From: Paragordius varius
Lineage: Eukaryota > Animalia > Nematomorpha
Direction of reading: 5' to 3'
NCBI GenBank assembly: GCA_964247055.1
Contig: OZ176052.1
Coordinates: forward strand, 372,001 to 436,000
DNA: 64,000 nt
Shown: positions 12,221 to 51,770 of the stretch, one piece after another
How positions within the stretch are numbered: position 1 is the first letter of the stretch
Layout: each line of letters opens with the position of its first letter
The notes under the pieces: generated by a model
What the model saw: only the letters and a program-made list of their open reading frames with translations
The model's database searches: none
What the model was told of the DNA's origin: nothing
Made by a program: the position numbers and the translations under genes

Positions 12221-12255
12221 ATAAAAAAACCGAGCTAACTAAATCAGATAATAAA

Positions 12256-14499
12256 CTGGGGACAATACCCGATGACTGGCTTTGTTCCAAAACAATTCTA
12301 ATACACAAAAGGGGTACCATTAATGATATAAAAAACTTTAGACCCATAACTATTTCTAACACACTCTATATAATTTTTTTAAATATGTCTAACCAAACCT
12401 TACTGAAAACCATAATAGATAAAACTTTAATTCACCCTAATTAAAAAGGATTTATGCCCTTTGATGGAATATTAGAGCACAACTATGTGATTGAACAAAA
12501 AATAAAGAGTGCGAAACAAGATAAACATAAACTACTAATAGCATTTCTTGATATTATCAAATCCTTTGATTCGATTCCGCACAATATACTTATCAATACA
12601 ATTAATCAACTTCTAATAAACACATTACTAAAAATATAATCATTCAAAATATAACTAATTCTAAAACCCAAATCTATACACAAGGCGGACTGACAGATCC
12701 TATTGCATTTCAAAAGGACATTAAACAGGGCTGCCTTGTCTCCGGAACCTTATTTAACCTGGCCATCAACCCACTCTTGGAATTGCTAAACATATCCACC
12801 ACATCCCTAGCGTATGCCGATGATTTGGTAATCATCGCACACCAAGTAGATGCTCTCCAGAAAACTATCCACACCGCAGAGCAATGGCTTCAATCCCATA
12901 ACATAACAATCAATGCGAACAAATCTGCTCTTCTATGTATTAACTCGTCAAATCCTAATATAACCATACATAATCAAATCCTCGAACAAATCCCAGAAGG
13001 AAAATCCATCTCTTACCTTGGCAAACCAATTTCACCTTTAGCACCCCCTAAAAATACCCATGAACTGAATAACCTGGTAGACAATATAACACAATCGAAT
13101 CTGACACCGTGGCAGAAATTAGACTTTTTTAAAACATTCATATTTCCCACTATTATCCACTCCCTCAGAATGGAAGCAATTAAAACCGAGCTAACCAAAT
13201 CAGATAAAATTCGTTTTCAGATAAAAAAAATAACAGCATTACCCCCCACAGCCATCACTAACTATTTCTATGCCCCCACTAAAGCAGGCGGACTTAATCT
13301 GCCACAGCTAGCAACTACATGACAACTTTATAATTGATTCAACTTACAAACTATTAACGTCTCATTATCAATATTTAGCAGCTTAAGCCATTAATGATTT
13401 AAAACATACCGTATCTAGACATACAAAGTCAACCACCATTAACGATATTTAATTAAACCAATACTTAAATAATGAAATACAAATCAAAACGACAGGATGC
13501 TCATCCATATATACAAAAGCGAGGCAAGCCTCTAAAAGACTTGACCTAGCATGGGAATTTCAAATTCCAATAACAGGGCACTCGGTAAACTTTGACCCGA
13601 ATGCCCGAAAATTTATTATACCATCCCTATCCAAAAGAAATGCTAAACACAGCTTACAATCCTTAACTGATTGCCCGAATAAAGGTAAAGTGATTGAGGC
13701 CATCAAACAACACCCAGCCTCTTCCCACTTTACCCTTTCGGGTACATATACATCCTTTAAATCCTGGCGGTTCATCCACAAGGCACGCCTTAATCTGTTG
13801 CCAGTGAATAGCCGTCCAGGGTCATTCAAAAATTTATTGTGCAGGAGATGTGGGAAGGCAAATGAAACTCTCTCCCATGTATTGAATCATTGCCTTCGAT
13901 ACTCTCCGCACTGGATTAGGCGACACAACGCTTGTTTGGACATTCTGAAAAATCATTTAACAAGCAACACCATAATACAACACGAAAACACTAACATAAT
14001 ATATTTACCATTGAAACTCGACCTCATATTAACTAAAAAAAATAATTGCTATATAATTGATGCCACCTGCCCTTTTGAAAACAAATTCCAATCATTGACC
14101 TATGCCTCCCTAAATATAATTGAGAAATACAATCAGTTGATACCATTAATGCAAACACAATACAAGAGTATAGAAATACTACCGCTGGTAGTCGGAGCTC
14201 TTGGTGCTTGTCATCCAAAAATGACTTAATCATTAATAACCTATGCCGAGCACAAGAACCATCCACGATCTGCGAGCAAATGGGTAAGCAGTACCATCTT
14301 TTATAGCTCTGAACTATGAAGCTCATTATCCAATGATTCTATTGGATCCAATCCCCTTCCATACATCAAAAAACATTAACATATGAATAATTTATTACTA
14401 GAGTATTGAACAAACACAGCATTTATATTCGTTCTTTTTTTATTATTTACTTTTCTTCTTTTCCTGACATTTTCTTTCATATATAATTTATATAATATA
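12256..14499 (+). mobile_element. Utopia-like RLE non-LTR retrotransposon, 5'-truncated, frameshifted
   Basis: FRPITISN, MPFDGILEHNY, YADDL, LTPWQKL, CRRCGKANETLSHVLNHC, RHN, IIDATCPFE. After a TIR insertion and ~40 bp more, a U2 3' half begins at 15486. Confidence 0.92.
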
Positions 14500-15447: not shown

Positions 15448-15485
15448 ATAATTTGATTACACCCAAACATATTTAATTAAATTCA

Positions 15486-15616
15486 ATCTGTTCTTATCTG
15501 CTTAATATCTAATACGACCTCTAAATTAAGTTTTTTTGGAGATTTTGGGGAGGCGCTCCTGGCTTGCCTATTCCATCGGGTCAACCTGGTGTTGCAGTAT
15601 CTCCAGGAGTGGCCCA
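15486..15616 (+). pseudogene. U2: U2 snRNA 3' portion (downstream half of a split U2 gene)
   Basis: ATCTGTTCTTATCTGCTTAATATCTAATACG, Sm-like TTTTTTTGGAG, CCTGGTGTTGCAGTATCTCCAGG; small deletions relative to 36438-36589. Confidence 0.9.
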
Positions 15617-16173
15617 AATACAATCATTAAACTAATTTAGAAACTCTTTAATAAATAATTATAATTTTAACAAGTTTAAAAAAATTATGATAGAAAAATT
15701 TCAGCTCATTTTCATTCTCACCACTGTGATCAAGATCATGCTAACATGATCGAAATATAAGTTTTATTAATAAATTTTTTATTTGTTAATAATATATTCA
15801 TACGTTTGCCAAATTAATTCTTGTATTGTCATTCACGTATGGAATCTTTAAATTTTAAAAATTTTTTAAGTTTGAAAAGGTGGTAAATTTGATATTATAG
15901 AGAGTTTTGAAAAAGTTGTTTATGTTAAAAACGGTTTGAACGAATCCAGTAATGTGTACAGCCCACTTCTGTGTCCAGAAACAAAATCTCCAAAAATAAA
16001 ATAACATTATGGGCCGATTACTAAATTTTAATGTTTTATGGCGTCTAAAAATCAATAGATAGAAATAATACAATGAAGGCCCTCATGAACCTATTTAACC
16101 ATTAAAAGTTTAAAATAAATCTAGTGAACATAAAACATTTATTAAAAAAATAGGGATGTAATGATTGATTTAA

Positions 16174-20769: not shown

Positions 20770-21450
20770 ATTTTAGTTTTGTTATGATTTAATGTAAGAT
20801 TATATTTTTTGCACACATTTATAAAAGTTCGGAGACTGTTTTCGAGGTTCGTTTGTGAATTTGCCAAGATTAACGTGTCGTCTGCGTAGTGGAGAGTCGT
20901 CAGAGTGTGACCCCCTACTTTTATTCCTGGCAGATTCATATCCCTCATAATACATTCCAAATATATGTTGAACAACATGGGGGATAAAATGCAGCCTTGA
21001 CGCAGACCTATGTTCATTGGGGTCCAAGAGGTCGGGCCATGCGGGGTGTTAAGTGATAGGTAGGAGTTGGACTATATGAATTTAATTAATATGATTAAGT
21101 GATCGGAAACTCCTATTTGTTTAAGGGCCTTCCAGAGAATGTCATGTTGAACGGTATAGAAGGCTTTAGAGATATCCACAAAGCATAGGTGTAGCTCATT
21201 TTTGAATTTACAGTTTTTTTCTATTATCCATCTACGGCATCCTGTTTTTCTCTAAAGCCTGCCTGCGTCATTGAGATTTCCGGGTTGACAGGCGGTTTTG
21301 TATTATTTTTAGGAACACTTTTGAGGTTTGATTGATTAATGCTATTGTGCGGTAGTTTTCACATAATTTAGGATCGCCCTTTTCAAATATAGGGACCGCT
21401 AGTAATTTGTTCCAGTCCTCCGGAACGTTGCCTCACTGAAAATTTGGAAT
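20770..21450 (-). mobile_element. RTE-clade LINE reverse-transcriptase fragment
   Basis: GLRQGCILSPMLFNIY, LHYADDTLIL, LNHNKTK; upstream degenerate QAGFR and CFVDISKAF; 3'-truncated at ~20770. Confidence 0.85.
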
Positions 21451-28401: not shown

Positions 28402-31400
28402 TATATATTACAATTTAAAAATGGACCCTTACAAATTTACATTGTATATATATATTAAAAATATTAATAAAATTATCAGATTTTAAATCAGTGGCGTTTC
28501 TTTTAAAAAATTCTGGTTATTTATAATTATATAATTGATGGAATTTATATCACATTGCCTTAATAAAATTATTACGTAAAAACTTTCAAATTACTTACTG
28601 CCTTACATTATTAACACTTGAGACCCTTGCTTCAAATACATAAGAAGGTGTTCCGATTGCTATAAACTTGTTTGTTGTTTGTATAAATATTATAAAAAAC
28701 CATACACATATAGACAGGAAGGTACTTTAAAGTAAAATATATGTACAAGTACAATCTATAAGAAAACAAACGACTAATTTTAAAATAATTATTAATTATT
28801 GGTTGTCATAATGTAATTAAAAAGATTTTATTATTTTTATACCAAAAGTCTGAAATAATGATGCATAGACATTTTTTCCATAATTATCAAGTTATCGATA
28901 TTTTATATTCAGGGGTAAAAAATGCCCTAAAGTGTATACGGATAATACATATAATTTATTTGTTACTGACATTTTCCTAGTACTAAATGATTGATGAAGA
29001 TCCGAGGAATTTTAAATACAGTTAAACCTTTTTAAGCGTACTTTTTTGTGAGGTAGCTCTTTTTACCTTTTTTTTCAATAATTGATTTATTTATTGCATA
29101 TCACGTTTTAACTTTTTTCGCACAAATCAAATAAAAAGTTCTTTTCCATTTATTTGTATTAGCAATAACATTGGTTACATCAACTATTTAAAACTTTAGG
29201 TCCCAGGGCGAGCAATCTTTGGACCGCATTATTTTATTTTTGGGAAAATGTTGATTCCTACAAATATTTTTAGGTTTTGGAAATTATTGTTAAATCCTGA
29301 AAAACCGCTATTACGTTAGCTTAATTTAACCATCACTATTATTGATTACCAATAAAATAATAATTTTATTGGCATGAATTTTGAGGATAGGCATCCGTCA
29401 AAAGGGTTTAATAATAATTGATTAATGAGATTTTTTATTCGCCAAAGTTGGTATCCCAGAAATAGAAAAAAATAATTTTGGGAAGAGATGCGGAATCATT
29501 ATTGAAATATTTATTAAATCCTACATATGGAAATTTATATGTATGTTATAAAAGTGATTTAATTTTATTACAGAAAAACCGTTTGACAACAACCAAATTT
29601 TAACGATTCCCCGAAAATAATGGAAGATGGAGAGCTGCCAAAAAAGTTGAAAATCCGCTTGTTAAATCAACATTGCTGCAAGCCAGATTTAACAATACTA
29701 AATTTGAGTTAGGCTAAGATATATCATTGAAAAATTTATATTATATGAATAACGTAAGAGTGAACCTTTTTTGCAGTCAACCATATCAAGCACCAATAGA
29801 AGGAAATAAAGATAGGGGAAATTATATACAATACTAAAGCAGTTTTATGGAACATATCATCCATCATTTTATTAATGCCCATATAAATATTTTATTGTTT
29901 TATTTAAGTAATAAAACTCAGCGTGAAACAAAAGTATATTTTATAAACGGGCACAACAAAAAATTAGGCAATGAAAATAATAAAAACCAGTGGACATGAA
30001 GTTCCAAGCTTGTCATAAGTTCGGAGTCTATCTCATTAAAAATAGCTTAAAATTCAGACGCTAATAACCACTTTAAAATTTGAAACAATATAACAAATTA
30101 AAAATTTCTTTTTATTTTCACCTAAATTATAGTCTGACGATTTTAAAATATTAATTTCTTACAATTATAATTTTTCTAGGACAGATATAGATAATCGATA
30201 GTTTTAAAAATTATTCTAAAAGTCGGTCATAAACATACTTGTAATGACGGCATTTGGAATACAGTGTAACGCTTTCGATAGACTACATTTTAAAATTTAA
30301 CAATCAATAAATTTTCCACCAAATAATATATGTTTAATATAATTTGAAACATATATTACAATCTATTTCCCAGTACGAAAACATCAGTAATCAGCAAAAC
30401 AAAGCCGCAATAGGTAGATCATAGTAAATATTTTAAGCGATTATTGTTTTACAATTTAAAACTTACAGCATAATTTTAATTATTGCATTTTAGCGATTTT
30501 TCAATAAAATCTTGTTTTAATTTAAATCTAAATATAAACTATGAGGAAATGAGTTTTTTTAACAGCCTATTTACAACTCTACAAGATTTTCTTTTAGAAT
30601 CTTTTAGCATTTCTTAGGTTATCGAAAATAACGTAATTTTAGTTATGCATCACAAGTTGATTACGTGTTGATAAAAAAAGATTAAACAATGAAAACAAAA
30701 ACATATTTTAAGTTTCAATATATATTTTTCTTTTCCCTAATATATTCTAATGAAGAGAAGGCATGCCCATAAAAATACTGTGCAATATAAAATTTGCGCA
30801 CATGAAAAAGAGTAAATTTGATTAAGTGCAGAAATTTATTTATCTTTTTAGGTATTTTTTACATATTGAAGAAAAAATAAAAACACATTTGTGGCATAGA
30901 ATTATTTTCAAATGATATTTTTTTCCCTTATAAATAAAGAAATAAATTACCGGCTTTATTTTTCGCTTATTTTTATATGGTAATTTATTAAAAAAATATC
31001 AATAGTTGTTTTCTTTTTGTGAATTTTTTTAATTTACAATCTGCATAAATTACAAATGATTTTATTATCTGCAATTTTATTACATTTTTTCGCGGCATCT
31101 GCAACAAAGTTATTTTTCCATTTTATAATCATATATGATTTTATAAAATCATTTATTCATAATTTTACGCTGTTAATCGTTTAATTCAAAATTTGAATTT
31201 ATATTGAATATTAACTATTGGAGATCTCGGGGCCTTATTCCCTCTTCACGATAAAACTTATATTCTTCGCGCTTTAAATATATAACAGTATCAAAAACTT
31301 TATTCTCTTTCATCATCAAATTTACGGATTAATCATATAACAATATACGATTTATTATAGGAAAAAATAAATTTTAATATCTCGTTACAATAAAATATTT

Positions 31401-31907
31401 TTTTACGTTAGAAAATGATGAAGCTACATATTTTTTTATAACTGTTTTTTTAAATAAACTGGAAATTATTCTAAAATCCTATTCCAAATTTATTTTTTAT
31501 ATTTGGAAAGTTTATTACATTGATCAACCCCAAAACATTTGTATAGAATTATAATAATAATAAATTTATTGTGTGATATTTACAATATATAATGCTGGAT
31601 ATGGATAATATAATAAATACAGGTAAATTAACACACAGAGATATTGTATATACAAACAAAATTCTAAAACAAATGGATAAAATATGTATAGAATGCATCT
31701 ATATAAAAATGATGAAAATGTGAGAGCAACATTGTAAAAATATCACAATTTGAAACAAAAATATAGAGTATTTGGTATCATTCGATAGCTAAAAAAATGC
31801 TTTTTTCAACTATTTCCGTTAAAAAAAAGAATATAAAGGTGAGAATAATGTCTCGATTCCCGAAAGGAAATAAATTTATATTAAAGAATGAAAATTTTTA
31901 TATGGTT

Positions 31908-31943
31908 ATCGCTTCTCGGCCTCTTGGCTAAGATCAAAAGTGT
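31908..31943 (+). ncRNA. U2: U2 snRNA 5' portion (nt 1-~36) of a split gene
   Basis: ATCGCTTCTCGGCCTCTTGGCTAAGATCAAAAGTGT matches the conserved U2 5' end; similarity stops at the branch-site-recognition sequence. Confidence 0.93.
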
Positions 31944-34900
31944 CGTCCCTTCTTACCTTAAATTCTTAATAAAATTAATTAAACTTGATCTTATGCCATC
32001 TTTTATACTTTTACAAATATTTAACTGTCCCTTTTTAATTCATTGCACTTTCATACCTTTTTTTGTAATTTTTTGTGCCTTTTTAAATCTCCCCCCTTTG
32101 GTTAAGTTCGCGCCCCTCTTAATTGTTTTTGTTTACCCCCCTTTTTTTTCAAATTTCGCGCGCCTCTTAATTGTTTTTTTGTTTACCCCCCCTTTTTAAA
32201 TATTCCCTCCCTTTTGCTTTAAATTCGCGCTTTGGCCATTTTTTTTAAACGGTTTTTGTTTACTTTCTCCATCTTTGTTAATTGTTATTTGAAATTCGCG
32301 CCTCTCTCTTTATCTTTTATTCGCATGTTGTTTTTACTCTTAATTGTGTGTCTCTGAATTCCCGGCCCCCTTTTGGTTATATATTAATTATCCGGGTGAT
32401 TAGGACTTTATTTATTTCCATTCTTTAATCCTTTGGTCCATCTAAATTTCTTTCCAATATTATATATTGTTTATTTTTATTATAGATATGATTTCAACCA
32501 ACACTATTAGCTCCAACAACGTACAAATCATGTTTCCCCTTACAATAAGTGATAATGATAATCAACCAGTGTACTGCAAGACAACCTTCTGCCATATCTC
32601 TGTCACCACGGTCAATACTCAAAGCCATCCATCATTCTGTGTCAACCCGTCCACAACTCCAACACCCGATATTGGCTCTCTCTATGAACACCAATTCCCT
32701 TCACTCTCTTCATCTCAGTTCTACGACAACGTGTACACAGCTACCAATCAGTCATCCAATCAGGCCAAATCTCCCAGCTCAAACATTAAACGCAAGACCA
32801 TCCTTGATCTTGTCCATCCAGCCAACAAAATGCTTAAGATAAATAATAATGATAATGATGGCGACCTATTGGAGGCGATGCCACATCAACCTACCCTGCA
32901 GGACAAAACCCTATCCTTCTATTTCCCTTTGCCTAATCACTTCTTATGTCCGTTTGAATCTTGCAATCATCAATTTCGTTGTAAATCCTGGACTGCCCAG
33001 AGACAGTCTCTTCTACGTCATATTAAGCTGGTCCATAAAGAACTAATCAAAATAGTTAATATTTGCAAACCTTGTAACAAAGTTTTATCTATTCACCCAA
33101 GTATACATATGAAAGAGTGCATTTTTGCGTCCAAATCTCCTATTGTCCAAATGCCTCACGCATGTGATGAGTGTGACTTGTCGTTTCCCAAGCGCATGTC
33201 TCTCTTATCTCATAAAAGGTCTCATAATCTACCTCCTCATCCTCACAGCAAACCGTTAAGTCTGTCAAACCTCCGATTCAATCCGTCTAATAAGCCTAAG
33301 GTTGTCGAGTCATCTCCAACCCATTCAGTAAATTTTTTTGATCCACCCAGCTCTCCAGTTAATTCTTCTCCTACCAAAGTGAGTGGGACCTCAAACATCA
33401 TTGGTAAGGGACCTGAAGGCAATAATTCCAGTACGGATATTAATTCCAATATTCTAAATCCCAGTAGTTCGGTAAACAAAAATTATTTTAATTACTTTTC
33501 TAAGAATGAAGTCTCTTTATCTAATCGCTTTACTATTCTTGAGGAGAGTGTTGATGAGGAACCCACTTCATCGGTTACTCTACCTCCACCAAATAAAAGT
33601 TTTAATAAATCCTCTGCTTTAAATAAAAATACTTTTCCTTTCACTAATTTTAACAACCTTCTTGACTCCCACGACGAGAATTCCGACTGGGAGGACGTTT
33701 GTTCTTTAATAAGCTCTATTCAAAATGCACTATCTCCTCCCCGGGCTGATTATAATAAGTCTAAAAGTTTGGTTCATAAAGATTTAAATATTCGTAGCAT
33801 GTATAAGAGAAATAGGAAAAAGGCTATAAGATTAATCGTTGATGGCCCTCCATCCTCTTGTAAAATAAATAACGAAGATATAACAAATTATTTTAACAAT
33901 ACAATTGGCAAAAAATCTGAGCCTATTAAATTTAATTATTCTAATAATTCTGTCCCTTTACTTGATTTTATTCCCTTTTCTGCATCTGAAGTTTCTGATA
34001 AACTAAGAAAAGTATCTAACAGCTCCCCTGGTCCTGATGGTATTTCATATACCAAATGGAAGCAGGTGGATCCCAAAGGTATTCTTTTATCTAAAATTTT
34101 TAATTTGTGTTTAAGTCATAGAATGATTCCTAATCATTGGAAAGTAACTAAGTCAATCTTAATTTCTAAAAAAAAGGGAGACCCTTCTCTTGTTTCAAGC
34201 TGGAGGCCCCTTTCACTAAGCAATACTATTTATAAATTATTTACTGGCCTTATTGCCAACCGAATTTCTAAACATATTTTAAAGAATAACTTATTATCAT
34301 CAGCCCAGAAAGGATTTATGCCTTTTGATGGCTGCTTTGAGCATAATTATATTTTAAATAAATCAATTTCTGATGCTAAACATAATAAAAAAGATATTTT
34401 TGTAACCTTTATTGATATCACTGCTGCGTTTGACTCGGTCCCTCACCAGCTGATTTTTGAATGTCTCCCTAATTTTGGTATAGATAATAATATTCAAGCT
34501 TTAATTAAGGATATTTACACAAATTCATGTACTCAGTTCTTTTCCGCCTCTGGGTTAACGCAACCCATTCCTTTCTTGTCTGGCATTAAACAGGGGTGTC
34601 CAATTTCTGGCCTTCTTTTTAATTTGTCAATCGATTCTGTGTTGAGATCTATGGTGTTTAATGGTCACAATGTCCTCGCTTATGCTGATGACATTGTTTT
34701 ATTGTCTGACTCTCCTGAACGTCATCAAGTTGGGCTCAACTTGTTAGAATGTCTTATTCATGATATCGGTCTTTCGATCAAAGCTGAGAAGTGCAATAGT
34801 ATTTCTATTGCTTCTTGTAGTCCTGTTTTTAAGATTGGTGAAGTTGTCGTCCCCTCAATCAGTCAAGGAGAGTTTGTTAAGTTTCTTGGAAAGCCTGTAG

Positions 34901-36437
34901 GTCTCAATTTCATTAATCCCGTTCCTTCTACGGAAATTGTGGATAAAATACATAGTTCTAGCCTCCTCCCTTGGCAAAAGCTAGACGCTATTAAAACTTT
35001 TTTCTATCCCACTATTTCTCACCAGTTGAGAAATAATGAGCTTAAAATGGTTACAGGTGAATATCTAGATAAAAAGCTAACTAAAGTGTTCAAACAAATA
35101 TTAAATCTTCCAAGAGATGCCACTAACAATTATATTTTTGGCTCTCGTAATAAGGGCGCCTTAGGGATGCCCCTATTCCGAGATGACATTAATATATTTC
35201 GTGTGGATTCCGCTTTTAAATTACTTACTAGCTTAGATCCTTCTAGAAGAGTTTCTGCTCTCGAGGAACTTAAGGTTTCGGCTAGCTTTCGTTTTAAGGT
35301 TCGATTAGATTCAATAACTCCCGATCAATTAGGCAAATATTTGTCTGGTTATGAGAACCCTCTTGTCTCAAATCCAGCTAATAAATGACAAAACATTTGG
35401 ACAATAGCGAGAATTGCGTCTGAATCTCTCAAAATTTCCTGGTCTTTTGATGATTCTTTTCAGCCTACAGTAATTTCAGAGTTCTCTAAAATCTCCCAAG
35501 ACAATCGCTCAGCTGTTGTTTCTAACCTTCGATTTTATAAACGAAAGTTAAAGGATACTGAGCTACACCATTTTGCTTTGCAGGGTCGGGTGATGGAGTG
35601 CGTCGCTGATGATAAGGTCAGTCATCATTTTCTTTACAATAATAAAGATCTTCGATTCAGAGACTGGAACTTCATCCATCGAGCGCGGCTCAATCTGCTT
35701 CCAACAAAAATGCGACTCAGGTCGTCGGAACAAATGTGCCGTCGCTGCGGCAAGTCAAAAGAAACTCAGGCACACGTTTTAAACCACTGCCTCAAAGATG
35801 ATAATATAATCACCAAAAGACACAACATCATAGTGGACCTGATTAAAGACAACCTCCCATCAAAATTCAAGATCTTAAGTGAAAATCAAGCCATTGATTC
35901 GTCGAGACTACGTCCTGACCTCATTGTAACAGATGGCACTGATTGCTATATCATTGATCCCACAGTGCCGTTTGAAAACAGGCTAGAATCGTTCGAAACG
36001 GCATTCAATAATAAAATAATGAAGTATAGCTGTTTGGCTCAACAATTACAGGAAACATACAGCAACACCCAAGTCATTCCAGTTGTTGTAGGGAGCCTCG
36101 GCTCATGGTATTCGAAAAACGATGTTCTTTTTGAGAAGATCAGGTTCCGATGCCCTACCCAACTAAAGAAATCAATAGTTACCAATACTATCAAATCATC
36201 CTCGGATATGTACCACATGTTTATGAGCGGTCGAAATTCCCTCATAGACAACAACCCAACAAATGCATCATTGTAATATTTTTTATATATATTTTTCTTT
36301 TTATATTTATTTTATTTTTTATATATATATATAATATTTTCTTTCTTCCCCCTTGTAACTTCCCCATGCCCAATATTGTTGCGTAGCACTTTTCTTCATA
36401 TATTCTAAAATGTATTTTTATATATATTAATAAATTA
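31944..36437 (+). mobile_element. Full-length U2-targeting RLE non-LTR retrotransposon (Utopia-type)
   Basis: Lies between the U2 5' and 3' portions; one long reading frame with zinc fingers, RT and RLE; A/T-rich 3' end. Confidence 0.93.
32488..36276 (+). CDS. Retroelement polyprotein (~1262 codons): 3 N-terminal Zn fingers, RT, CCHC knuckle, RLE; one internal TGA at 35386-35388
   Basis: CPFESC..HIKLVH, CKPC..HMKEC, CDEC..HKRSH; SPGPDGI, WRPLSLSN, QKGFMP, AFDSVPH, GIKQGCPISG, YADD; CRRCGKSKETQAHVLNHC, RHN, RPDL, IIDPTVPFE. ORF 35578-36276 is in frame with 32467-35388 and the 63 codons between are open. Confidence 0.92.
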
Positions 36438-36589
36438 TATCTGTTCTTATCAGCTTAATATCTGATACGACCTCTATAGAGGTCCATGATATTAAATTTA
36501 TTTTTGGAGATTTTGGGGAGGCGCTCTGGGCTTGCCTATCTCTCCCCATCGGGTCAACCTGGTATTGCAGTATCTCCAGGAGTGGCCCA
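36438..36589 (+). ncRNA. U2: U2 snRNA 3' portion of the split gene
   Basis: TATCTGTTCTTATCAGCTTAATATCTGATACG, hairpin GACCTCTATAGAGGTC, Sm site ATTTTTG, CCTGGTATTGCAGTATCTCCAGG. Confidence 0.95.
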
Positions 36590-39314
36590 AACATAATCAT
36601 AAAAATCAATTTAGAAACAATTTTTAAACTTTAAAAAACTTAAAATATTATAAAAAAAATTATTTGAAAAGTTTATAGGAATGATAAGGTTGTGAATTTA
36701 ATATTATAAAGTTATGAAAAGGGGGTATGTCAAAAAAATTTAAACATCCAGTAATTATATCGATATCAAGCCACTCTTGTATATATACCAGGAACCAAAT
36801 CTCCAAAAATAAAAATAACATTATGGACCAAAAAAGTTTTAATTTAAAATATATATAATAACAAAATGAAAAACATACTTGAGTGAATAATAAAATTAGG
36901 TAGTAATAAAAGATGAAATACAACTAATATCCGTTGAAAAATTAAAATTTAATTTTTATGGCGTATAATAATCAATATAAACAAATATTATAGCGATGTA
37001 TTTCATGAAATTACATGAAAAAATTAAAATAAATCTAGCGAAACAATAATATTATAAAAATAGAGGTAATCGTAAAATTTAATGTTAAAAGAAATGCGCG
37101 ATAATAAAAAAATGGTGTAAGCATGTTGAAAATATGTATTATTTGTAAAATAAATTTAGAATTAAAAAATAAAACCCTGATGTGGAGTAAATTACCACAA
37201 CAGCATTTAACGTTAAAACAATCAAAACATGAAATTTACTTTTGTAAAATATAGATATAAAAATTTAATTAATTTTGCTAGCACATTTAAACCTAATAAA
37301 TTGTTTATAAATTTGCACCTCATGATCTTTTCACTTTTTTGTATTCGATGTATTAGGGAGGTTACATATCCCAGAGCTAAATCTTTTAACTATAATACTG
37401 TTTTGAAACCTATTTTAGTTTAAAAATGATTATCCAACATTAACCTGTATTATAAAAATAATCTGATAAAGTATATACATTCCGATAGAATAATATATCA
37501 GAAACGTTGCTTTTGGTTTTAGGGCTTACACGTGTTTAAGATGGATTACAATTGTCGCAAGAGTTTCTTCATATCAGATAATGGCAAAATTTGCGAAAAA
37601 TATTGCTAAAACATATTTTTGTGAAAGATAAATACTTCCAAAACATATCATATAAATTTATTATAAACTAATAAAAAGCATATTATATCTAAAAATTAAT
37701 TTTTTGATGTGAATTCCCGAAAGTCCCATTTTTTGGAATTATTATATACGCAAATATGCACGCTGTAAAAAAATACAAATATATGCTGATTTGCTAAAAA
37801 ATTAGAAAACGCATACATTTTTTAAAATTAATTTTGCAAAATTTTGTTGAAGGGTACTTTTTGCTATTTTGCGTTATGGAAACTGTATAACGCTTGACAT
37901 TAAAACACTTATTCTATAATTCGATGATGCTCAACGTTTCTATCACATTAGAATTTAGAATAAAAATTTCGTTCGTCTTCAAAATTATGTGAAAGCCAAT
38001 ATGTTTTTTTTTACAAAAACTTACCAAAATTTTTAAGCAGAAGCTTTTAATTTAAACTGTGGATATATCTGGTTCAATATTATTATATTATATATAAAAA
38101 GTTTGTAATAATATTAAGTTTTTTTACCCTATCCAAAAAGCCTCAAAATTGTATCAAGTACGCTACAAAAATATTTTGCCAATTTTAAAAAAGTATAAGC
38201 GGGTAAAAAGTGGGCCTAAAATAAAAAAGCTTGACTATGTTCGGCGCAATCAAAAAAAAGTAAAAATATACTTAAAATCGTATGGTCCAACACGTTTTCT
38301 GAAAAATTGCCTCAAAGACATAATGATTGTAGACTTCTGTTTCCAAAAAACCTTTTTTACATGCGGTGGGCCCGAACCGGGGGCTTTTAAAAAAAGGACG
38401 AAGCTATGTCGAGCATTAATGATACTTTTTTGATATTTGGATTTGAATGGGTCTACCGGTTTTCCGGAAACAGATCAAAAAGCCATAATTTCCATTCTTA
38501 TAAATATATAGTTTTAGGGAAAACAAAAATGTTCAAAAACTTAAGGTATGTTTTTTTTGTTTTCATAAACTTTTTTTAACACCTAATCAAGTTGTGATGT
38601 ATATAACTTTTAGAGAAATTGAACATAAGAAATGTTAAAAAATTATAAATCTGTGAAGTTGTAAATAACCGACCAGATATTATAAATATTAAGCTGTTAA
38701 AAAAACTTATTTACTAATAATTTTTATTTAGATCTAAATTATAAAACAATATTTCATAGAAAAATCGCTGAATTGCCATAATTGATGCACAAAGTTTTGA
38801 ATTTTAAAACAATAATCGCCTTATGTGATTTCTATTTTTTACCCATTAAATAGGCGGCTTGATTGAATTTATTTGGTGATATTTTCGTCCTGGAAAATAG
38901 ATTGCAATATACTTTTTTAATTATATTAAACATATATTATTAATTTAAAATTTTTAAATGATTTTGTCCATATATATTGATTGTTTTTTTAATGTGATGT
39001 TCCAAACATTGTTATTACGATTATAGTATATTTATTACGATTACTTTTAAAATAATTATTACAAAACTATTGAATGTCTATATCTGTCCTAGCAAAATAA
39101 TGATTGTAAGAAATTAATTTTTTTTGTATATTTAAAAGCCACAACGCACGATTTTAAAATCGCCAGGCTTTAGTTTTCTTATAAATCATATCGTATGATT
39201 AAATAAAAAGACAAGTTATATTTATGTTTCAAATGGTTTTCAGCGTCTGGATTTTGTTATTTTAAGTGAGATAACTCTGAACATAAAGCAAGTTTAGATT
39301 TTGATGATCTACAG

Positions 39315-44879: not shown

Positions 44880-45800
44880 AGCAATCAGTAACCTGACAGG
44901 ATTGCCAAATTATGGGGCTTACCATCAAGGATTGAATGGTTGTCGATACATAATTGAATGGGTCTAAGTCATTGGAGTGCGATTTATAATTAGGACTATT
45001 TTTATATCAATAGAAAATAAGAAGGAGTAGGTTAGGACAATTGCGGCTTTCATAGAGTCAGGGCTATCAGTGATGATAGTGAGATCGTCCGCGAAGGCCA
45101 AGCATGAGGTAAGGGGATTGTTTAGGGCTACGATAATGGGGTTAATACAGAGGTTAAAGATTAGGCCGGAAAGATGGCCCCCCTGCTTGATTCTTTTAAG
45201 ATAAGGGATGGGGGGTCGGTAAGATTTTTATCGATTAAAAATTGGATAGAAGAATTAAGTAAAATAAAATTTAAAAGGCTTTCAAGCGGTGGGGGCAGGC
45301 CAAGGGACGTTAAAAGTTGGGTGCAGACAGGCAGGGGAATGGAGTCGAAGGCGGCGGAAACGTCCAGCCATAGAAAGATGGTCTGGTGGTTCGCTGTTCG
45401 GGCCTTCGACAAGCGGTTGGAAATGTAGTAATTGTGTTCCAACACGCCGTCGAAGGGGGAAAACCCTTTTTGTTGAGGGGCGATGAGATTGTGGAGGGCT
45501 ACATGGTGGCTGAGGAATTTATGGATGATTTTAGCAAAGATTCGATAGATTATGTTAGAAATGGCGATGGGGCGAAAATTGGAGGGGTCGGAGGTGTCGC
45601 CTTTTTATGGATTAAAATGGAAAAGGATTGCAAGTCTGGAATATCAGGCAGAGATGTTAAAATTTTGGTAAGGTCATCTGCGCCCGAAGTCAGGGGTTTG
45701 ATATTTAATGTAGCGATGATTTGGTTGATACAAAGGATGAAAATAAGGCTTGAGAGGCGGCATTCTTTCTTTATTTCTTTTTGATAATAATAAGGCCTGT
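44880..45800 (-). mobile_element. RLE-type non-LTR RT fragment (Utopia-like)
   Basis: EHNY, LWLDVSAAFDSIP, GIKQG, AFADDL; reverse complement of 46028-46700. Confidence 0.85.
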
Positions 45801-46027
45801 TAATTTTTTGTCAAAAATCTGGCATCGATTATGTTTAAGGCATTTAAAGATCTCAACATTACATCAGGCTTATAGGAAAAAAATCCATAAATTTGTTTTT
45901 CAAATAAAATTTAAAAACCATATTTAAATTGTTTCTTAGAAGGGATAGAATACGCTTGTAGCGGGGTATCCATCCAAATTATCTTTTTTGACTTCATATA
46001 TTCATGAATTTCCACGAATTTTCATAA

Positions 46028-48900
46028 AGAAGGCAACACCTCTGACCCGGCCAATTTTCACCCCATCGCCATTTCTAACATAATTTATCGAATCTTTGCT
46101 AAAATCATCCATAAACACATTAGCCACCATGTTTCTCTCCACAATCTGATCGCCCCCCTACAAAAAGGGTTTTCCCCCTTCGACGGCGTGTTGGAACACA
46201 ATTACTACATTTCCAACCGCTTGTCGAAGGCCCGAACAGCGAACCACCAGACCATCTTTCTATGGCTGGACGTTTCCGCCACCTTCGACTCCATTCCTCT
46301 GCCCGTCTGCACCAAACTTTTAACGTCCCTTGGCCTGCCCCCACCCCTTGAAAGCCTTTTAAACTTTATTCTATACTTAACTCATCAACACAATTCCTAA
46401 TTGACAAAAATTTGACCGACCTCCATCCCCTATCTTAAAGGAATCAAGCAAGGGTGCCCTCTTTCCAGCCTAATTTTTAACCTTTGCCTTAATCCCAATA
46501 TCGTACCCCTAAACAATCGACCCCTCACCTCATGCTTGGCCTTCGCGGACGACCTTACTATCATCACAGATAGCCCCGACTCTATGAAAGCCGCAATTGC
46601 CCTAACCCTCTCCTTCTTATCTTCTATTGATATAAAAATAATCCTAATTATAAATCGCACTCTAATGACTTAGGACCCATTCAATTATGTATCAAAGATC
46701 ACCCAACCTCATACCTGCTCGATAAGTCCCGTTAATTCTTGGGTAAATTTGTTGGATTCTAGATTGTTTCGGAGACAAATTTACAAGTCTAATTCATTTT
46801 ATCGAGATGAAATTGTATTCCTCTATTCCATTACCCCTTGGCAAAAATGCGACAGCTGTTTAATATGCCGACTAATCATCAAAAGCTCTGTTTGGAAATC
46901 GCTCTCTAATCGATATATCTTTAATTAACTCATCTTCGCACATATCCTAAGTCCCTTTCATTTTTCCCGCAAGATGAAACTAATGTTTATTTCTATAGTG
47001 ACACCGATTCTGGTGGATTACAGTGGATTGAATAAAAGAATATTTGTAGTAAAAAAAATTTATATTAGTAAAAAATAAATAGTAGTGAAAATAAAAAGCA
47101 AAGGGCCATGGTGCACGAGTAATCATTTTACCATGCCCATTAAATAATGATTATTTTTACTATTTAATAATGAAGGGAAAGAATATAACGTAGTAGTATG
47201 GTGTTACATAGTCAATAAATACCCTTCCTTTCCAACCTCTTTCTTCTTTCAGTGATATACCATTTTTAAATTTCCCCGTGAATAATTCAATTTCACCTTT
47301 TAACAATACAAAATCATCCCCGAACATTTTAAATTCACCCTAAAATAAATTATGTGCGTATCAATATAAAAATTATCAATATCTTTTTATATTTTTAAGC
47401 AATAAAAATTCTTTAATACCGAAAAAATATATTAAATTTATCCAGAGGTATATCCTTCAAAACCGGCTGGATAATTTATCTGCAAAGATCGGACGAAAAC
47501 TGTTACCTGTGAATAGTCGCTCAAACTCCTCTGAAAACCCATGGTAATATAAAGTGGGAAGGCAGATTAAATTCTCGATCAGATTAACCATTGCCTTCAA
47601 TACTCTCCACAATGGACAAAAAGGCATAACGCATGCCTGGAAATTTTAAAATCACCAAATTAGTTTATGAAAACTTACCTTCTCAACATAACAACCCTTA
47701 TATAATTAATATATTAAAGGTAATTGCTTTAAATTTTAAAAATAAAAAAAAACTATGAAAGATCACTGTATTACAGTCATGTAGACTTTAATTTATCAAA
47801 AATTTACTTTTTTTCGTTAAATGGGTATTAATATTTGGTAAAGAATATAAAAACAAGAGCTATATGGTATTACTATATCATATTCTTTAAAAAAGTAAAA
47901 GAAGTGTGGGGAAAGGGCGTCCGAAATCTTTGGTTAAAAATGAAAATCTTAAAATATTGTTAAAGCGAATGGTAATATTTTTGTTAATTTAGCAAAATTT
48001 TATATATTAATTTGTTTGATAAAATTTTTATTTCTAGATTCAAATTGAGGTACCCAAATATACCCCAGACTAAATCTGAGTTAGCATTTTTAATAAACTA
48101 GTGAAAGAAACGGTCCCAATTTAAATTTATGCTTCTTTCCTAATAAAAATTATATAAATATGCCAAAATATCTAAATAAAATTTTGTTTTGAAAAAATTA
48201 CATGTCAAACAACTTCGACGCCATTTTTATCTTACAAAATATTTGCAAATGTCGTCTCATTTAGTGTTAAGGGTAAAATTAAAACTTTTTTATTTAAATT
48301 ACATCCTACATTCATAGAAATAGATTAAGCGGTTTATTTAATATTTTTTCAATTTTACCATTGCACACATGTCACGTTGACTAAATTTTACCTTTCGTTA
48401 GCTTAAAATTAATATCAAGTATTTTTGAATAATTTTTTTTATATATTTCTGTTTATTATTGTTATTAAGTGCAAAATTTTACAATGGCTTTGATATATTT
48501 AAAAAATTTAATTTTATGATTATTTAATATTGCATCTTTTAAAATCGTTCCCATATCAAAACAAAAAAATTATAATTGAGATAAAAATTACGATTTTCTT
48601 AACCCTTTTATACAATAATTTTGAAGGGTTAGTAGTTAGTGTATTTTCATTTTTTACCAAATATTTCCGACGCCCTTCCCCCACACTTCTTTTACTTTTT
48701 TAAAGAATATGATATGGTAATACCATATAGCTCTTGTTTTTATATTCTTTACCAAATATTAATACCCATTTAACGAAAAAAAGTAAATTTTTGATAAATT
48801 AAAATCTACATGACTGTAAAAAAAATAGATAAATACCAACTGTATACTACCCCTAATACAAGCACAAAAAACAAAAATATTGATGATGAGATATAAAGAA
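46028..48900 (+). mobile_element. Decayed RLE-type non-LTR element interrupted by later insertions
   Basis: RT 46028-~47035 (HPIAISN, LDVSATFDS, KQGCPLS, FADDL, PWQK, GGL); knuckle/RHN piece 47445-47700 (LLPVNSR, HCLQYSPQWTKRHNACLEIL); weak RLE tail near 48830-48890. Confidence 0.72.
47774..48816. mobile_element. Non-autonomous Tc1/mariner-type element with ~185 bp TIRs
   Basis: TA|CAGTCATGTAGA...TCTACATGACTG|TA; 47774-47960 is the reverse complement of ~48630-48816; contains a piggyBac-like MITE remnant at ~48030-48495. Confidence 0.85.
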
Positions 48901-49439: not shown

Positions 49440-49528
49440 AAGCCATCCCCAAAATCTCCAAAAATAAATTTATTTATTATTATGGATTTTTTAATGGTCG
49501 TATCAGATATAAGTAAAAAGAACATATA
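49440..49528 (-). pseudogene. U2: Degenerate U2 snRNA 3'-half fragment
   Basis: Minus strand TATATGTTCTTTTTACTTATATCTGATACGACC...TTTATTTTTGGAGATTTTGGGGA matches 36438-36520; starts at the same U2 position and is cut before stem-loop IV. Confidence 0.8.
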
Positions 49529-49539
49529 CGTTTAATTTA

Positions 49540-51770
49540 CAATGTATACATTAAAACTTAAAAAAGGTCGGTATGGTTAAATATAATATTTTTATATAGG
49601 TTGATTGGTGAATGCTGGATTATGGGATGGAAACATATGAATTTATGATTATTTTAAAATTAATTTTGTAAAAATGTTTTATGTAAAATAACACTCATGG
49701 AAAAAAATATGAATTAAAAACCCCGAGCAGGGTTGAAATATTCCTCCAAGAAAATTGGTTGATCCTGTTGTTGGTCTGATTGCAGCACATTCGTTTTGAT
49801 TCGATGCTGTTGTTTTGTTCAAAGCTTGACCTCCGTAAGAAGGCTAAGTTCAAGTAACATTTGTGTTGTTTATTGGAGGTAATGAGCAATGATTGGCTGT
49901 GTTGATGTTTAAACTGTGGCTAATGAATTAATTTAAGTAGCCATGGTTTGTAAACGGTTTCGATATCTTAGATATGGTAGAAAGATTAACACCATTTTTA
50001 AACTAAGACTAAAGCTGTTATAAGAGTCATATTGTTAAACCAATCATTAGACTTCTGAACCAAAAAACTAACAAGGTGTTAAATATTTGAACTGTTGGTC
50101 GTTTTTGGAATACCGTATTTATTTACTTCTGAAGGCCAGCGGAAGTATCTTGTTTTTTGGGTTCTAAGACTATAAGGGCATTAGCGATGTGAATTTATCT
50201 ACCTTATGATACAGGTTGAGTCAAAAGCCCCCCGCGTTCATCAAGGCAGGTCACGTCAATTAGAAAATGAATACCGTGGTATTTATTACTAAATATAATG
50301 AAGAGAAAGGGTAGCCGGATAAGAGTAGTCGGACAAAACTTCAACACAGCGTAAAATGTTTTAAGTATGTTTAAAGACAAATTCATAATAAAATCTTAAT
50401 CATTGATTAAAGATATGTAGTAAAGTTTCTGGGTGCCGCTCACATCACCATCGCGATGATGCGGGAACCTGGACTAGTGTTTGTAGGGTTTTAAATTTGA
50501 GTTGATTCAATGAATCTTCAATTTTGAATCCTACCACGGATGTTATGAAAGAGGAACTGGCTTTGTGGAGGGAAGCTGCTTCGATGCGAGCTTGGGAATG
50601 ATAAGGCTGTGTATAAACAAAAAATTATATTTGGACTTATTAGTTCGAACAAGGCGGCGGGAGGATGGGTCAATGTTAAGGTTTCACCCTTTTATAAAAA
50701 AAGTGCTAATTGGAATAGTCCTATAGAGAGACCGACACGTACGATGCTGAGCGAGATTAGCTGAAATATTGAAGACATTAATGATTTTAAATTATTTGAT
50801 GGAAATTTAGAAATATCGGTCAGAGGGAAGTTGAGTTTAGTCCTCTGATAAATGGTGGTTAAAAGGGTAAAAAGCGCAAGTTTGGAAATGGCCGGATCCG
50901 TGGTAGTTCGCAGCTTAAATGTTGAGTTTAGTCGGTATATATATAAAAGAAGAGATGTTTTAGAAACACCAAATCTCCCTTTAGAAACCGGGATGTAGAA
51001 ATAGTAAGTGGGTCCCTGGAGAAGCGATGTTATTTTTCCTATATTACGAATGAGAGAGTCCTCTTTAGATAGGCCTTATTCACCGACCCAATATGAAATT
51101 TATGGTACGGTGTTGGGAATACAAACACAGCCTATGCTGTATTTCTACCAGGGCTAGCAGCAGATCTGATATATCGGGTGAGATCAAATTTCATTGGTGT
51201 TCCAAAGTAGTCCTAAGCTTTGTCTTTTTGCAGAGAAGGAACCATGTTTGGTGGCTGCGGAGCTGGTTAGCAGCAAGGCTTGAGTCTAACCAATGAATTC
51301 GCCAAGTTTGCGCCAGACTTAATATTATTAAAGTTATCGGACATGATTCAGGAAGTCGTCGGCTTAGGGGTGACAGGTGGTGTATTGAGTGTTGTTAAGG
51401 GATATTAAGGGTGATTGAAATAAAAAGAAGAGGGGAATGCATATTTTTGGCGATAACTTGAGATTAGCGTCGGACAGGTTTCCCTCACTTGGAATTCGAG
51501 TAGAAGAAAAGAAGAGCTAGAAAGAATTAAAAACAAGTAAACAATGATACCAATCCACGGATAACTGCCGAAATGGCGGAATGAGGGGAATCAAAAGCTG
51601 CCTCAACATCGAGCCACAGAATGATGCATGGACGTTGTTGTTGCCTGGCCGAAGTCAATTTTTGCAAAAGGAGAAAATTACAAGGTGTAAGGCATGAATC
51701 CTTTCCTTTAAGGGGAGACCATATTGTTTGACATATAAGTGGAGAGAGACTTTGAAAATTATGGTGTTTT
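49540..51770 (-). mobile_element. Heavily decayed Utopia-like RLE non-LTR element
   Basis: KGFMPY (~51690), LWLDVEAAFDS (~51600), *ADDFL (~51360), ETLLHIFNQC (~50420), FLIDVTCLDE (~50250); 3' end runs toward the U2 fragment. Confidence 0.75.

What the first reader, a model, noticed from the sequence alone, without database searches (positions are those of the whole stretch)
31908..36589. U2 snRNA gene split at the branch-site-recognition sequence by a near-intact retrotransposon
Seen: U2 nt 1-36 ending AAGTGT, a 4.5-kb element, then U2 resuming at TATCTGTTCTT; canonical GTGTAGTATCTG is broken at that point. No TSD is evident. Established: Utopia elements are U2-specific RLE non-LTR retrotransposons, so the class is known. 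This copy has three Zn fingers, both junctions and one lesion, and is a candidate new family and programmable-insertion tool lead.
Basis: partly seen in the sequence, partly recalled or inferred. Interest (0 to 1): 0.75.

Follow-up and report, generated by a model that had tools for sequence, protein, structure and literature searches.

The report
Utopia retrotransposon splitting a U2 gene
A 4.5-kb jumping gene of the known U2-targeting "Utopia" kind sits at the standard Utopia site inside a U2 splicing-RNA gene. This copy is disabled by one stop codon, so it is a new family of a known kind rather than a new mechanism.

Summary

- **Layout:** U2 nt 1-36 lie at 31908-31943, a 4,495-bp element at 31944-36438, and U2 resumes at 36439 (ATCTGTTCTT...) and runs to about 36595.
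- **Target change:** both flanks align for about 1 kb with an intact U2 unit on the same contig. There is no target-site duplication; 2-3 bases (AGT) are lost, which destroys the branch-site-pairing sequence.
- **Coding capacity:** one 1,262-codon frame encodes three N-terminal zinc fingers, a reverse transcriptase (RT), a CCHC knuckle and a restriction-like endonuclease (RLE) of the PD-(D/E)xK type. A single private TGA at codon 967 lies ahead of the endonuclease.
- **Sister copies:** four copies (98.2-98.9% identical) have open frames and sit at the same U2 site.
- **Relatives:** the RT tree places this family with five other families of this genome, beside an arthropod clade. U2-flanked relatives from metagenomes lie on both sides, and Myb-bearing R2-type proteins lie apart.
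- **Retargeting:** its nearest relatives in this genome sit in U1 genes.
- **RNA ends:** older copies outside U2 carry U2 bases at both ends, and every family ends in AATAAA just before the junction. This suggests, but does not show, transcription from the U2 promoter with RNA ends that match the target.

The scan had already reported related Utopia copies elsewhere in this genome. Verdict: a new member of a known kind, of modest interest.

The parts
30996..31907 (+). Upstream flank of the U2 unit, including the presumed snRNA promoter region
   Evidence: Aligns at 84% over 972 columns with the upstream flank of an intact U2 unit on the same contig (L002). The last ~30 nt before U2 +1 are conserved among U2 units.
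31908..31943 (+). U2 snRNA 5' part (nt 1-36 here; one extra A compared with the intact genes)
31944..32487 (+). 5' UTR of the element: C-rich, with a 48-nt direct repeat in two copies at 32104-32199
   Evidence: No Rfam ribozyme was found at E<=1, and the fold is no better than shuffled sequence (z -1.19).
32488..36276 (+). Single ORF of 1,262 codons plus the terminal stop, interrupted by one premature TGA
32947..33225 (+). Three N-terminal zinc fingers (32947-33036, 33064-33120, 33163-33225)
   Evidence: Motifs. The third finger is canonical C2H2 (Pfam zf-C2H2_6 E 0.008; PRDM9 fingers E 3e-6). All three are conserved in families F50, B and D.
34168..34890 (+). Reverse transcriptase domain, with the active-site motif AYADD at 34678-34692
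   Evidence: Pfam RVT_1 E 4.5e-38. R2 protein structures 9nl2 E 1.3e-53 and 9dou E 3e-47. Motif position.
35386..35388 (+). Premature TGA (codon 967), the only lesion; it lies upstream of the CCHC knuckle and the endonuclease
   Evidence: Four sister copies carry a sense codon there that differs at one base.
35737..35790 (+). CCHC zinc knuckle
   Evidence: Aligns with the R2Tg knuckle. Invariant in five families. Position.
35815..36027 (+). Restriction-like endonuclease (KRHN ... RPDL ... IIDPT ... KIMKY)
   Evidence: R2Tg 9dou E 1.7e-18. The catalytic PD, D and K columns are invariant in five families. Position.
36277..36438 (+). 3' UTR ending in AATAAATTAT, with the poly(A) signal AATAAA at 36429-36434
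36439..36595 (+). U2 snRNA 3' part (from nt 38/39 to the end)
   Evidence: Rfam U2 121.7 bits. nhmmer places it at U2 positions 37-192 (L011).
36596..37438 (+). Downstream flank of the U2 unit
   Evidence: Window 36439-37438 aligns at 82% with the downstream side of the intact unit L002.

Best explanation
This is a full-length copy of a Utopia-type non-LTR retrotransposon (restriction-like-endonuclease class, NeSL/Utopia lineage). I call its family 'family A'.

It inserted by target-primed reverse transcription into a standard U2 snRNA gene unit, at the site that Utopia elements use from oomycetes to animals. The inferred steps are as follows. The endonuclease nicks the bottom strand at about U2 nt 38/39. 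The RT copies the element RNA from that nick. The top strand is cut 2-3 nt upstream, so AGT is lost and no duplication is made.

The copy later acquired one private stop codon between the RT and the endonuclease. It therefore cannot encode a complete protein, although its ends are intact and it could in principle be mobilised by the protein of its four open-frame sisters.

It is also inferred, not shown, that the RNA starts at the U2 gene's own +1 under the U2 promoter. In that model the RNA ends a few bases into the downstream U2 part, because the AATAAA signal sits 10 nt before the junction. The template would then carry target-matching bases at both ends, which would help priming and 5' joining.
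For: **Shown**
- Exact junctions, and an empty-site paralogue with 3 nt missing.
- Zinc-finger, RT, CCHC and RLE layout with catalytic motifs intact.
- Five further copies with the same 3' junction in U2, three of which also have the same 5' junction.
- Beyond the ~190-nt U2 part, the flanks of those copies differ from the window's, so these are separate insertions.
- Four sister copies have open frames of 1,264-1,265 codons. Synonymous codon differences outnumber nonsynonymous ones by about 3:1. Of the window copy's 22 private codon changes, 16 are synonymous.
- In the tree, the six in-genome families form one clade (96/88), sister to an arthropod clade (100/98) that holds a U2-flanked metagenome element. 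Further U2-flanked elements group with a Nasonia protein. Myb-bearing R2-type proteins lie apart.
- At least 15 of 63 metagenome relatives of the endonuclease domain are followed by a U2 3' part that starts at the same base.
- Of the 30 best U2 loci, 25 are cut at nt 35-40 behind such a tail.

**Supporting the U2-ended RNA model**
- Seven old family-A copies outside U2 genes begin with U2 nt ~6-34 (L041, L054, L055, L057-L060). Others end with 1-11 nt of ATCTGTTCTT.
- All in-genome families and 11 of 14 metagenome relatives carry AATAAA or ATTAAA 8-12 nt before the junction.
- No ribozyme match or unusual fold was found at the 5' junction.
Against: - No named Repbase Utopia, NeSL or R2 consensus sequences could be used. 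Clade membership therefore rests on proxy labels: U2 flanks, a Myb domain, a Ulp1 domain and source organism names.
- Deep nodes of the tree are weak (39-84).
- No RNA data were available, so the transcription start, the poly(A) site and the cleavage positions are all inferred from DNA junctions.
- Sixteen of 23 copies with intact 3' ends lie outside U2 genes, so specificity is not absolute. About nine of those share one flanking repeat and may stem from only a few events.
- The host organism was not identified here.
Confidence: 0.9

Rival explanations
1. The element is an R2-lineage retrotransposon that switched from 28S rDNA to U2, so it is not a member of the Utopia lineage.
For: The best solved-structure matches are R2 proteins. 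Many database relatives are auto-named 'R2'.
Against: No Myb domain was detected. In the trees, the Myb-bearing R2-type proteins (P0075, P0086) lie outside the strongly supported clade that holds family A together with U2-flanked elements. The 'R2' names are automatic labels. The Protein Data Bank holds no Utopia structure to match against.
Confidence: 0.04
2. The TGA is not a lesion; it is read through or recoded, so this copy still makes the full protein.
For: The frame stays open for another 295 codons after the TGA, with all endonuclease motifs intact.
Against: All four sister copies have an ordinary sense codon at this position, one base different, so the stop is private to this copy. The open frame downstream is expected if the mutation is recent. 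The window copy has only 22 private codon changes.
Confidence: 0.03
3. The split U2 at this locus arose by duplication or gene conversion of a U2 unit that was already occupied, not by an insertion event here.
For: U2 units lie in clusters: about 27 of 46 U2 matches fall within C3:257-528 kb. L031 and L033 share their immediate flanks and could be a duplicated pair.
Against: The window's flanks match an intact, unoccupied unit for about 1 kb on each side. They match the other occupied loci only over the ~190-nt U2 part and ~76 nt at the 5' side. The window copy is also the most divergent of the five.
Confidence: 0.05
4. A rival for the mechanism only: the element is transcribed from an internal promoter in its 5' UTR. 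The U2 bases on copies outside U2 would then come from microhomology at U2-like targets, not from a U2-initiated RNA.
For: Kojima & Jurka report short U2-like motifs at off-target Utopia junctions in crocodilians (PMC4640811). About nine off-target copies share one flank, so independent events are few.
Against: The 5' U2 pieces are 27-30 nt long, start near U2 +6/+8, and occur in at least two different flanks (L057 against L041/L054 and others). That is far longer than microhomology. No empty site with a U2-like sequence was found.
Confidence: 0.25

Closest known systems
Utopia (U2 snRNA gene-targeting RLE non-LTR retrotransposons; Kojima & Jurka 2015, PMC4640811), especially the arthropod families
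   Same: The 3' junction falls at the same U2 position (U2 resumes at nt 38/39). There is no target-site duplication, as in arthropod Utopia. It has one ORF with three N-terminal zinc fingers, an RT, a CCHC knuckle and an RLE. Several families coexist in U2 genes. Disrupted U2 genes outnumber intact ones. Specificity is leaky in older copies.
   Different: The best public protein match is only 41% identical over the RT region. The host is not in the paper's Table 1 if it is a horsehair worm, as earlier scan notes say (not tested here). The six families of this genome form their own clade, and it includes two families that sit in U1 genes.
R2 (28S rDNA-specific RLE non-LTR retrotransposon; structures 9nl2, 9dou, 8gh6)
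   Same: The same enzyme core: the RT, linker, CCHC knuckle and PD-(D/E)xK endonuclease all align. It also uses site-specific target-primed reverse transcription and depends on a host gene's transcription.
   Different: The target is U2, not 28S. No Myb domain was detected. No HDV-like ribozyme was found at the 5' junction. Off-target copies keep the host-gene leader.
NeSL-1 (spliced-leader-targeting elements of nematodes)
   Same: It belongs to the same broad NeSL/Utopia lineage in the published phylogeny. A Ulp1-bearing relative (P0115) falls in the same large clade.
   Different: Family A has no Ulp1 protease domain, and its target is U2 rather than spliced-leader genes.
Keno (APE-type non-LTR retrotransposon that uses the same U2 site)
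   Same: According to PMC4640811, its 3' flanking U2 sequence is identical.
   Different: Keno has an AP-type endonuclease. This element has a C-terminal restriction-like endonuclease and no AP-endonuclease domain.

Membership tests
Utopia | Insertion at the specific U2 snRNA site, with U2 resuming at about nt 39 at the 3' junction | tested here: met
   U2 resumes at (T)ATCTGTTCTT, which is nt 37-39. The same junction is present in five other family copies.
Utopia | Restriction-like (PD-(D/E)xK) endonuclease with a preceding CCHC knuckle, C-terminal to the RT | tested here: met
   The region aligns with the R2Tg knuckle and RLE at E 1.7e-18. The motif columns are invariant across five families.
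Utopia | A single ORF with one to three N-terminal zinc fingers | tested here: met
   Three Cys/His clusters are conserved in position in families A, F50, B and D. The element has one frame.
Utopia | RT groups with Utopia families within the NeSL clade | tested here: met
   Tested by proxy labels only. Family A sits in a 100/99 clade whose sister arthropod group holds a U2-flanked element. Other U2-flanked elements group with a Nasonia vitripennis protein. Myb-type R2 proteins lie outside. Named Repbase references were not available.
Utopia | Family-level preference for U2 genes | tested here: met
   Seven of 23 copies with intact 3' ends lie in U2 sequence, which makes up roughly 0.01% of the genome. 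Among copies at 95.5% identity or more, six are in U2 and one is elsewhere. Sixteen mostly older copies lie elsewhere.
R2 | Insertion in 28S rDNA and an N-terminal Myb domain | tested here: not met
   The target is U2. Pfam finds no Myb domain. The element is separated from Myb-bearing proteins in the trees.
NeSL-1 | Ulp1-like cysteine protease domain and a spliced-leader gene target | tested here: not met
   No Peptidase_C48 (Ulp1) hit was found, and the target is U2.
Keno | AP-type (APE) endonuclease N-terminal to the RT | tested here: not met
   No AP-endonuclease domain was found. The endonuclease is a C-terminal RLE.

The most novel reading that the evidence does not exclude
Family A is the closest U2-targeting relative of two families in the same genome that insert into U1 genes (49% identity, with the same three-finger layout). 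All of these families place a poly(A) signal about 10 nt before the junction. They appear to be copied from RNAs that start at the snRNA gene's own +1 and end just inside its 3' part. If this is right, the A/U1 pair is a natural retargeting experiment. Target choice would then be set jointly by the zinc-finger region and by snRNA-derived RNA ends supplied by the host gene, which would make the determinants of site choice directly mappable.
Probability: 0.35. Interest if true: 0.55.

Novelty: new member of a known kind. Interest (0 to 1): 0.3.

Why it matters
The finding adds a well-documented locus, with both junctions and an empty-site paralogue, to the small set of Utopia families that have complete ends. 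It extends the lineage to a genome where six related families share U2 and U1 genes. The specific copy is defective, so its main value is comparative. Together with its open-frame sisters and the U1-targeting relatives, it gives a natural system for asking how RLE retrotransposons read their target and whether they borrow the host snRNA promoter and terminator. For genome annotation, it shows that most U2 matches in this genome are dead halves left by such insertions.

Tried and rejected
- **The look-up of encoding contigs:** I could not inspect the contigs behind the spider, tick or Nasonia proteins, and used a metagenome scan instead.
- **Genome letters:** The shared flank of the off-target copies and the host's identity could not be followed further.
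- **Empty site:** a search for an empty site of that flanking repeat found none. The left flank alone occurs eight times, twice followed by other sequence.
- **Ribozyme:** a scan of 31700-32700 at E<=1 gave only U2. The fold of the junction region is no better than shuffled sequence (z -1.19).
- **U2 complement in the 5' UTR:** a 9-nt complement of U2 nt 19-27 looked like a leader hairpin. It occurs in 135 of 2,000 shuffles and is absent from families B and D, so I rejected it.
- **Tandem repeats:** the scan showed only AT-rich low-complexity arrays in the 3' UTR.
- **Fuzzy-regex junction search:** it timed out and I replaced it with BLAST.
- **Broken ORF:** it was searched as two pieces. In the one script that aligned it whole, the stop was written as X.
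- **Large representative protein search and structure prediction:** I did not use them, because the family scans left nothing open.
Full report
**Observation**

The window holds a U2 snRNA gene cut in two.
- The first 36 nt of U2, ending AAGTGT, lie at 31908-31943. This is a unique exact match, with none in 100 shuffles. It scores 39 bits against Rfam U2 in a local scan.
- U2 resumes at 36439 with ATCTGTTCTT and runs to about 36595 (Rfam U2, 121.7 bits, E 3.9e-24).
- The insert is 31944-36438, 4,495 bp.
- Intact U2 genes of the same genome read ...GATCAAAGTGTAGTATCTG....
- The window's flanks align with one such intact unit on the same contig (L002) for about 950 bp upstream (84%) and 1,000 bp downstream (82%). 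The two alignments meet with three bases (AGT) missing and nothing duplicated.

So this was a standard U2 unit. The insertion removed part of the branch-site-pairing GUAGUA, and there is no target-site duplication.

**Anatomy of the element**

- **5' UTR:** 544 nt, C-rich, with a 48-nt direct repeat in two copies.
- **ORF:** one frame from the ATG at 32488 to 36276, 1,262 codons.
- **Zinc fingers:** three N-terminal Cys/His clusters at aa 154-183, 193-211 and 226-246. The third is canonical C2H2. All three are conserved in position in three sister families.
- **RT:** Pfam RVT_1 E 4.5e-38, with AYADD present. The best solved relatives are R2 proteins (9nl2, E 1.3e-53).
- **CCHC knuckle and RLE:** a restriction-like endonuclease of the PD-(D/E)xK type. 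The motifs KRHN, RPDL, IIDPT and KIMKY align with R2Tg (E 1.7e-18) and are invariant across five families of this genome.
- **Not detected:** a Myb domain, an AP endonuclease or a Ulp1 protease.
- **Lesion:** a single in-frame TGA at 35386-35388 (codon 967), between the RT and the knuckle.

The broken frame was searched as two pieces.

**The family in this genome**

The window is G000:C3:372001-436000, in a 110.5-Mb genome of 44 contigs with about 25% G+C.

A DNA search found three other full-length copies and one copy that lacks part of the 5' UTR. All four have open frames of 1,264-1,265 codons and are 98.2-98.9% identical to the window's coding sequence.
- At the window's TGA, all four have a sense codon that differs at one base. 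The stop is therefore private to this copy.
- Codon differences between copies are about 3:1 synonymous to nonsynonymous. Sixteen of the window copy's 22 private codon changes are synonymous.
- Most divergence therefore arose under selection in active lineages, and this copy has decayed little since it inserted.
- These copies, and a sixth at 95.5%, are followed by a full U2 3' half at the same junction. Three also have the same 5' junction.
- Their flanks beyond the ~190-nt U2 part differ from the window's, so they are separate insertions.

About sixteen older copies (78-93% identical, plus one at 95.6%) lie outside U2 genes. Roughly nine of them sit in one shared flanking repeat on contigs C10 and C11.

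Specificity is therefore strong but leaky, as Kojima & Jurka describe for some Utopia families (PMC4640811).

**U2 genes of the genome**

Of the 30 best U2 loci, only five are full length. The other 25 start at nt 35-40, directly behind an AT-rich tail ending in AATAAATT. At least five different tails occur, meaning several element families. This matches the picture published for Phytophthora and Nasonia, where disrupted U2 genes outnumber intact ones.

**Relationships**

The word-based protein search found no protein above 41% identity over the RT region. The best hits are from spiders, ticks, insects, a springtail, a crayfish and a sponge. They include proteins from Nasonia vitripennis and Ladona fulva, both listed Utopia hosts.

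I therefore scanned metagenome contigs with an alignment of the endonuclease domain.
- This found 63 relatives.
- At least 15 are followed, 300-850 nt downstream on the same strand, by a U2 3' part that begins at TCTGTTCTT. Several more have variant U2 parts.

In RT trees rooted on Myb-bearing R2-type proteins:
- Six families of this genome form one clade (UFboot/SH-aLRT 96/88).
- That clade is sister to an arthropod clade (100/98) that contains a U2-flanked metagenome element.
- Further U2-flanked elements group with the Nasonia protein, and one groups near a Ulp1-bearing protein.

The element is thus nested among U2-inserting lineages and apart from R2-type proteins. Named Repbase references were not available, and deep nodes are weak.

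**A retargeted neighbour**

The closest relatives of family A in this genome are F50 (49% identity) and G43. Both are flanked by U1 snRNA parts, not U2.

The best tree is (G43,(A,F50)), with support of 100/99 and 100/87. A tree that joins the two U1 families is not rejected (p-AU 0.45). One switch from U2 to U1 is therefore enough, with family A as the nearest U2-targeting lineage.

**How it most likely works**

*Shown.* The junction geometry, the intact motifs and the repeated use of one site.

*Inferred from the known R2/Utopia mechanism.* A bottom-strand nick at about nt 38/39, target-primed reverse transcription, and a top-strand cut 2-3 nt upstream that gives the small deletion.

*Inferred from DNA only.* The RNA template may start at U2 +1 and end just inside the downstream U2 part.
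- Seven old copies outside U2 genes begin with 27-30 nt of U2 (from nt ~6-8), in at least two different flanks. Others end with 1-11 nt of ATCTGTTCTT.
- All U2- and U1-type families here, and 11 of 14 metagenome relatives, have AATAAA or ATTAAA 8-12 nt before the junction.
- No ribozyme or unusual fold was found at the 5' junction, unlike R2.

Such RNA ends would pair with the target during priming and 5' joining. No RNA evidence was available. A rival model, with an internal promoter and microhomology at the target, keeps about a quarter of the weight for this step.

**Status of this copy**

The stop removes the knuckle and the endonuclease from any product, so this copy cannot act on its own. 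Its ends are intact.

**Novelty and score**

This is a new family (41% identity or less to public proteins) of a known kind, at the known site, with the known layout.

The scan has already reported related Utopia insertions, the U1 family, head-to-head dimers and off-target copies with U2 ends elsewhere in this genome. Earlier notes take the host for a horsehair worm; I did not test that.

The 'programmable tool' idea is untested. The field already has large inventories of such elements (PMC13580325). Interest is modest.

Noticed in passing
window 10031-14220 and 15465-15622: A head-to-head inverted pair of another Utopia family (35-43% aa identity to family A): the left arm is at 12190-10031 on the minus strand and the right arm at 12265-14220 on the plus strand. 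The right arm is followed by a degraded U2 3' half (Rfam 52.7 bits) behind a tail ending in aattaaattca.
   Followed up: partly
window 44997-46604 and 49446-49548: A second head-to-head pair of RT fragments (45604-44997 on the minus strand, 46026-46604 on the plus strand), and a U2-like piece on the minus strand about 3 kb away.
   Followed up: no
L065 (G000:C6:3723000-3732500) and L068 (G000:C6:606000-614000): The two closest relatives of family A in this genome are inserted in U1 snRNA genes. The U1 5' ~19 nt lie upstream, U1 resumes at about nt 20 downstream, and AATAAA again sits at the element's 3' tip.
   Followed up: partly
L037, L039, L041, L042, L044, L048-L050, L054, L055, L058-L060 (contigs C10 and C11): Old family-A copies outside U2 share one flanking repeat. 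The 3' junction reads ATCTGTTCTT followed by AAAAGAACAC, a short palindrome (GTTCTT/AAGAAC). It is not resolved whether this is a secondary target or one amplified event.
   Followed up: partly
G000, 30 best U2 loci (L001-L030): Only five U2 genes are full length, and two or three of those are sequence variants. Twenty-five are 3' halves left behind Utopia tails. About 27 of 46 U2 matches cluster in C3:257-528 kb around this window.
   Followed up: partly
L083-L145 (metagenome contigs): Utopia-type elements abutting U2 3' halves are common in public metagenome contigs. They presumably come from host or soil animal DNA. Most end in AATAAA-like motifs just before TCTGTTCTT.
   Followed up: partly
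window 58859-60004: An ORF with RNase H, integrase zinc-binding and integrase core domains, which is a fragment of an LTR retroelement.
   Followed up: no
window 20856-21426 (minus strand): Another short RT fragment, related to family A at 33-35% aa identity.
   Followed up: no
window 55067-55112: A weak match to the histone 3' UTR stem-loop (25.5 bits, below the gathering score). The neighbouring 218-aa ORF has no Pfam match.
   Followed up: no
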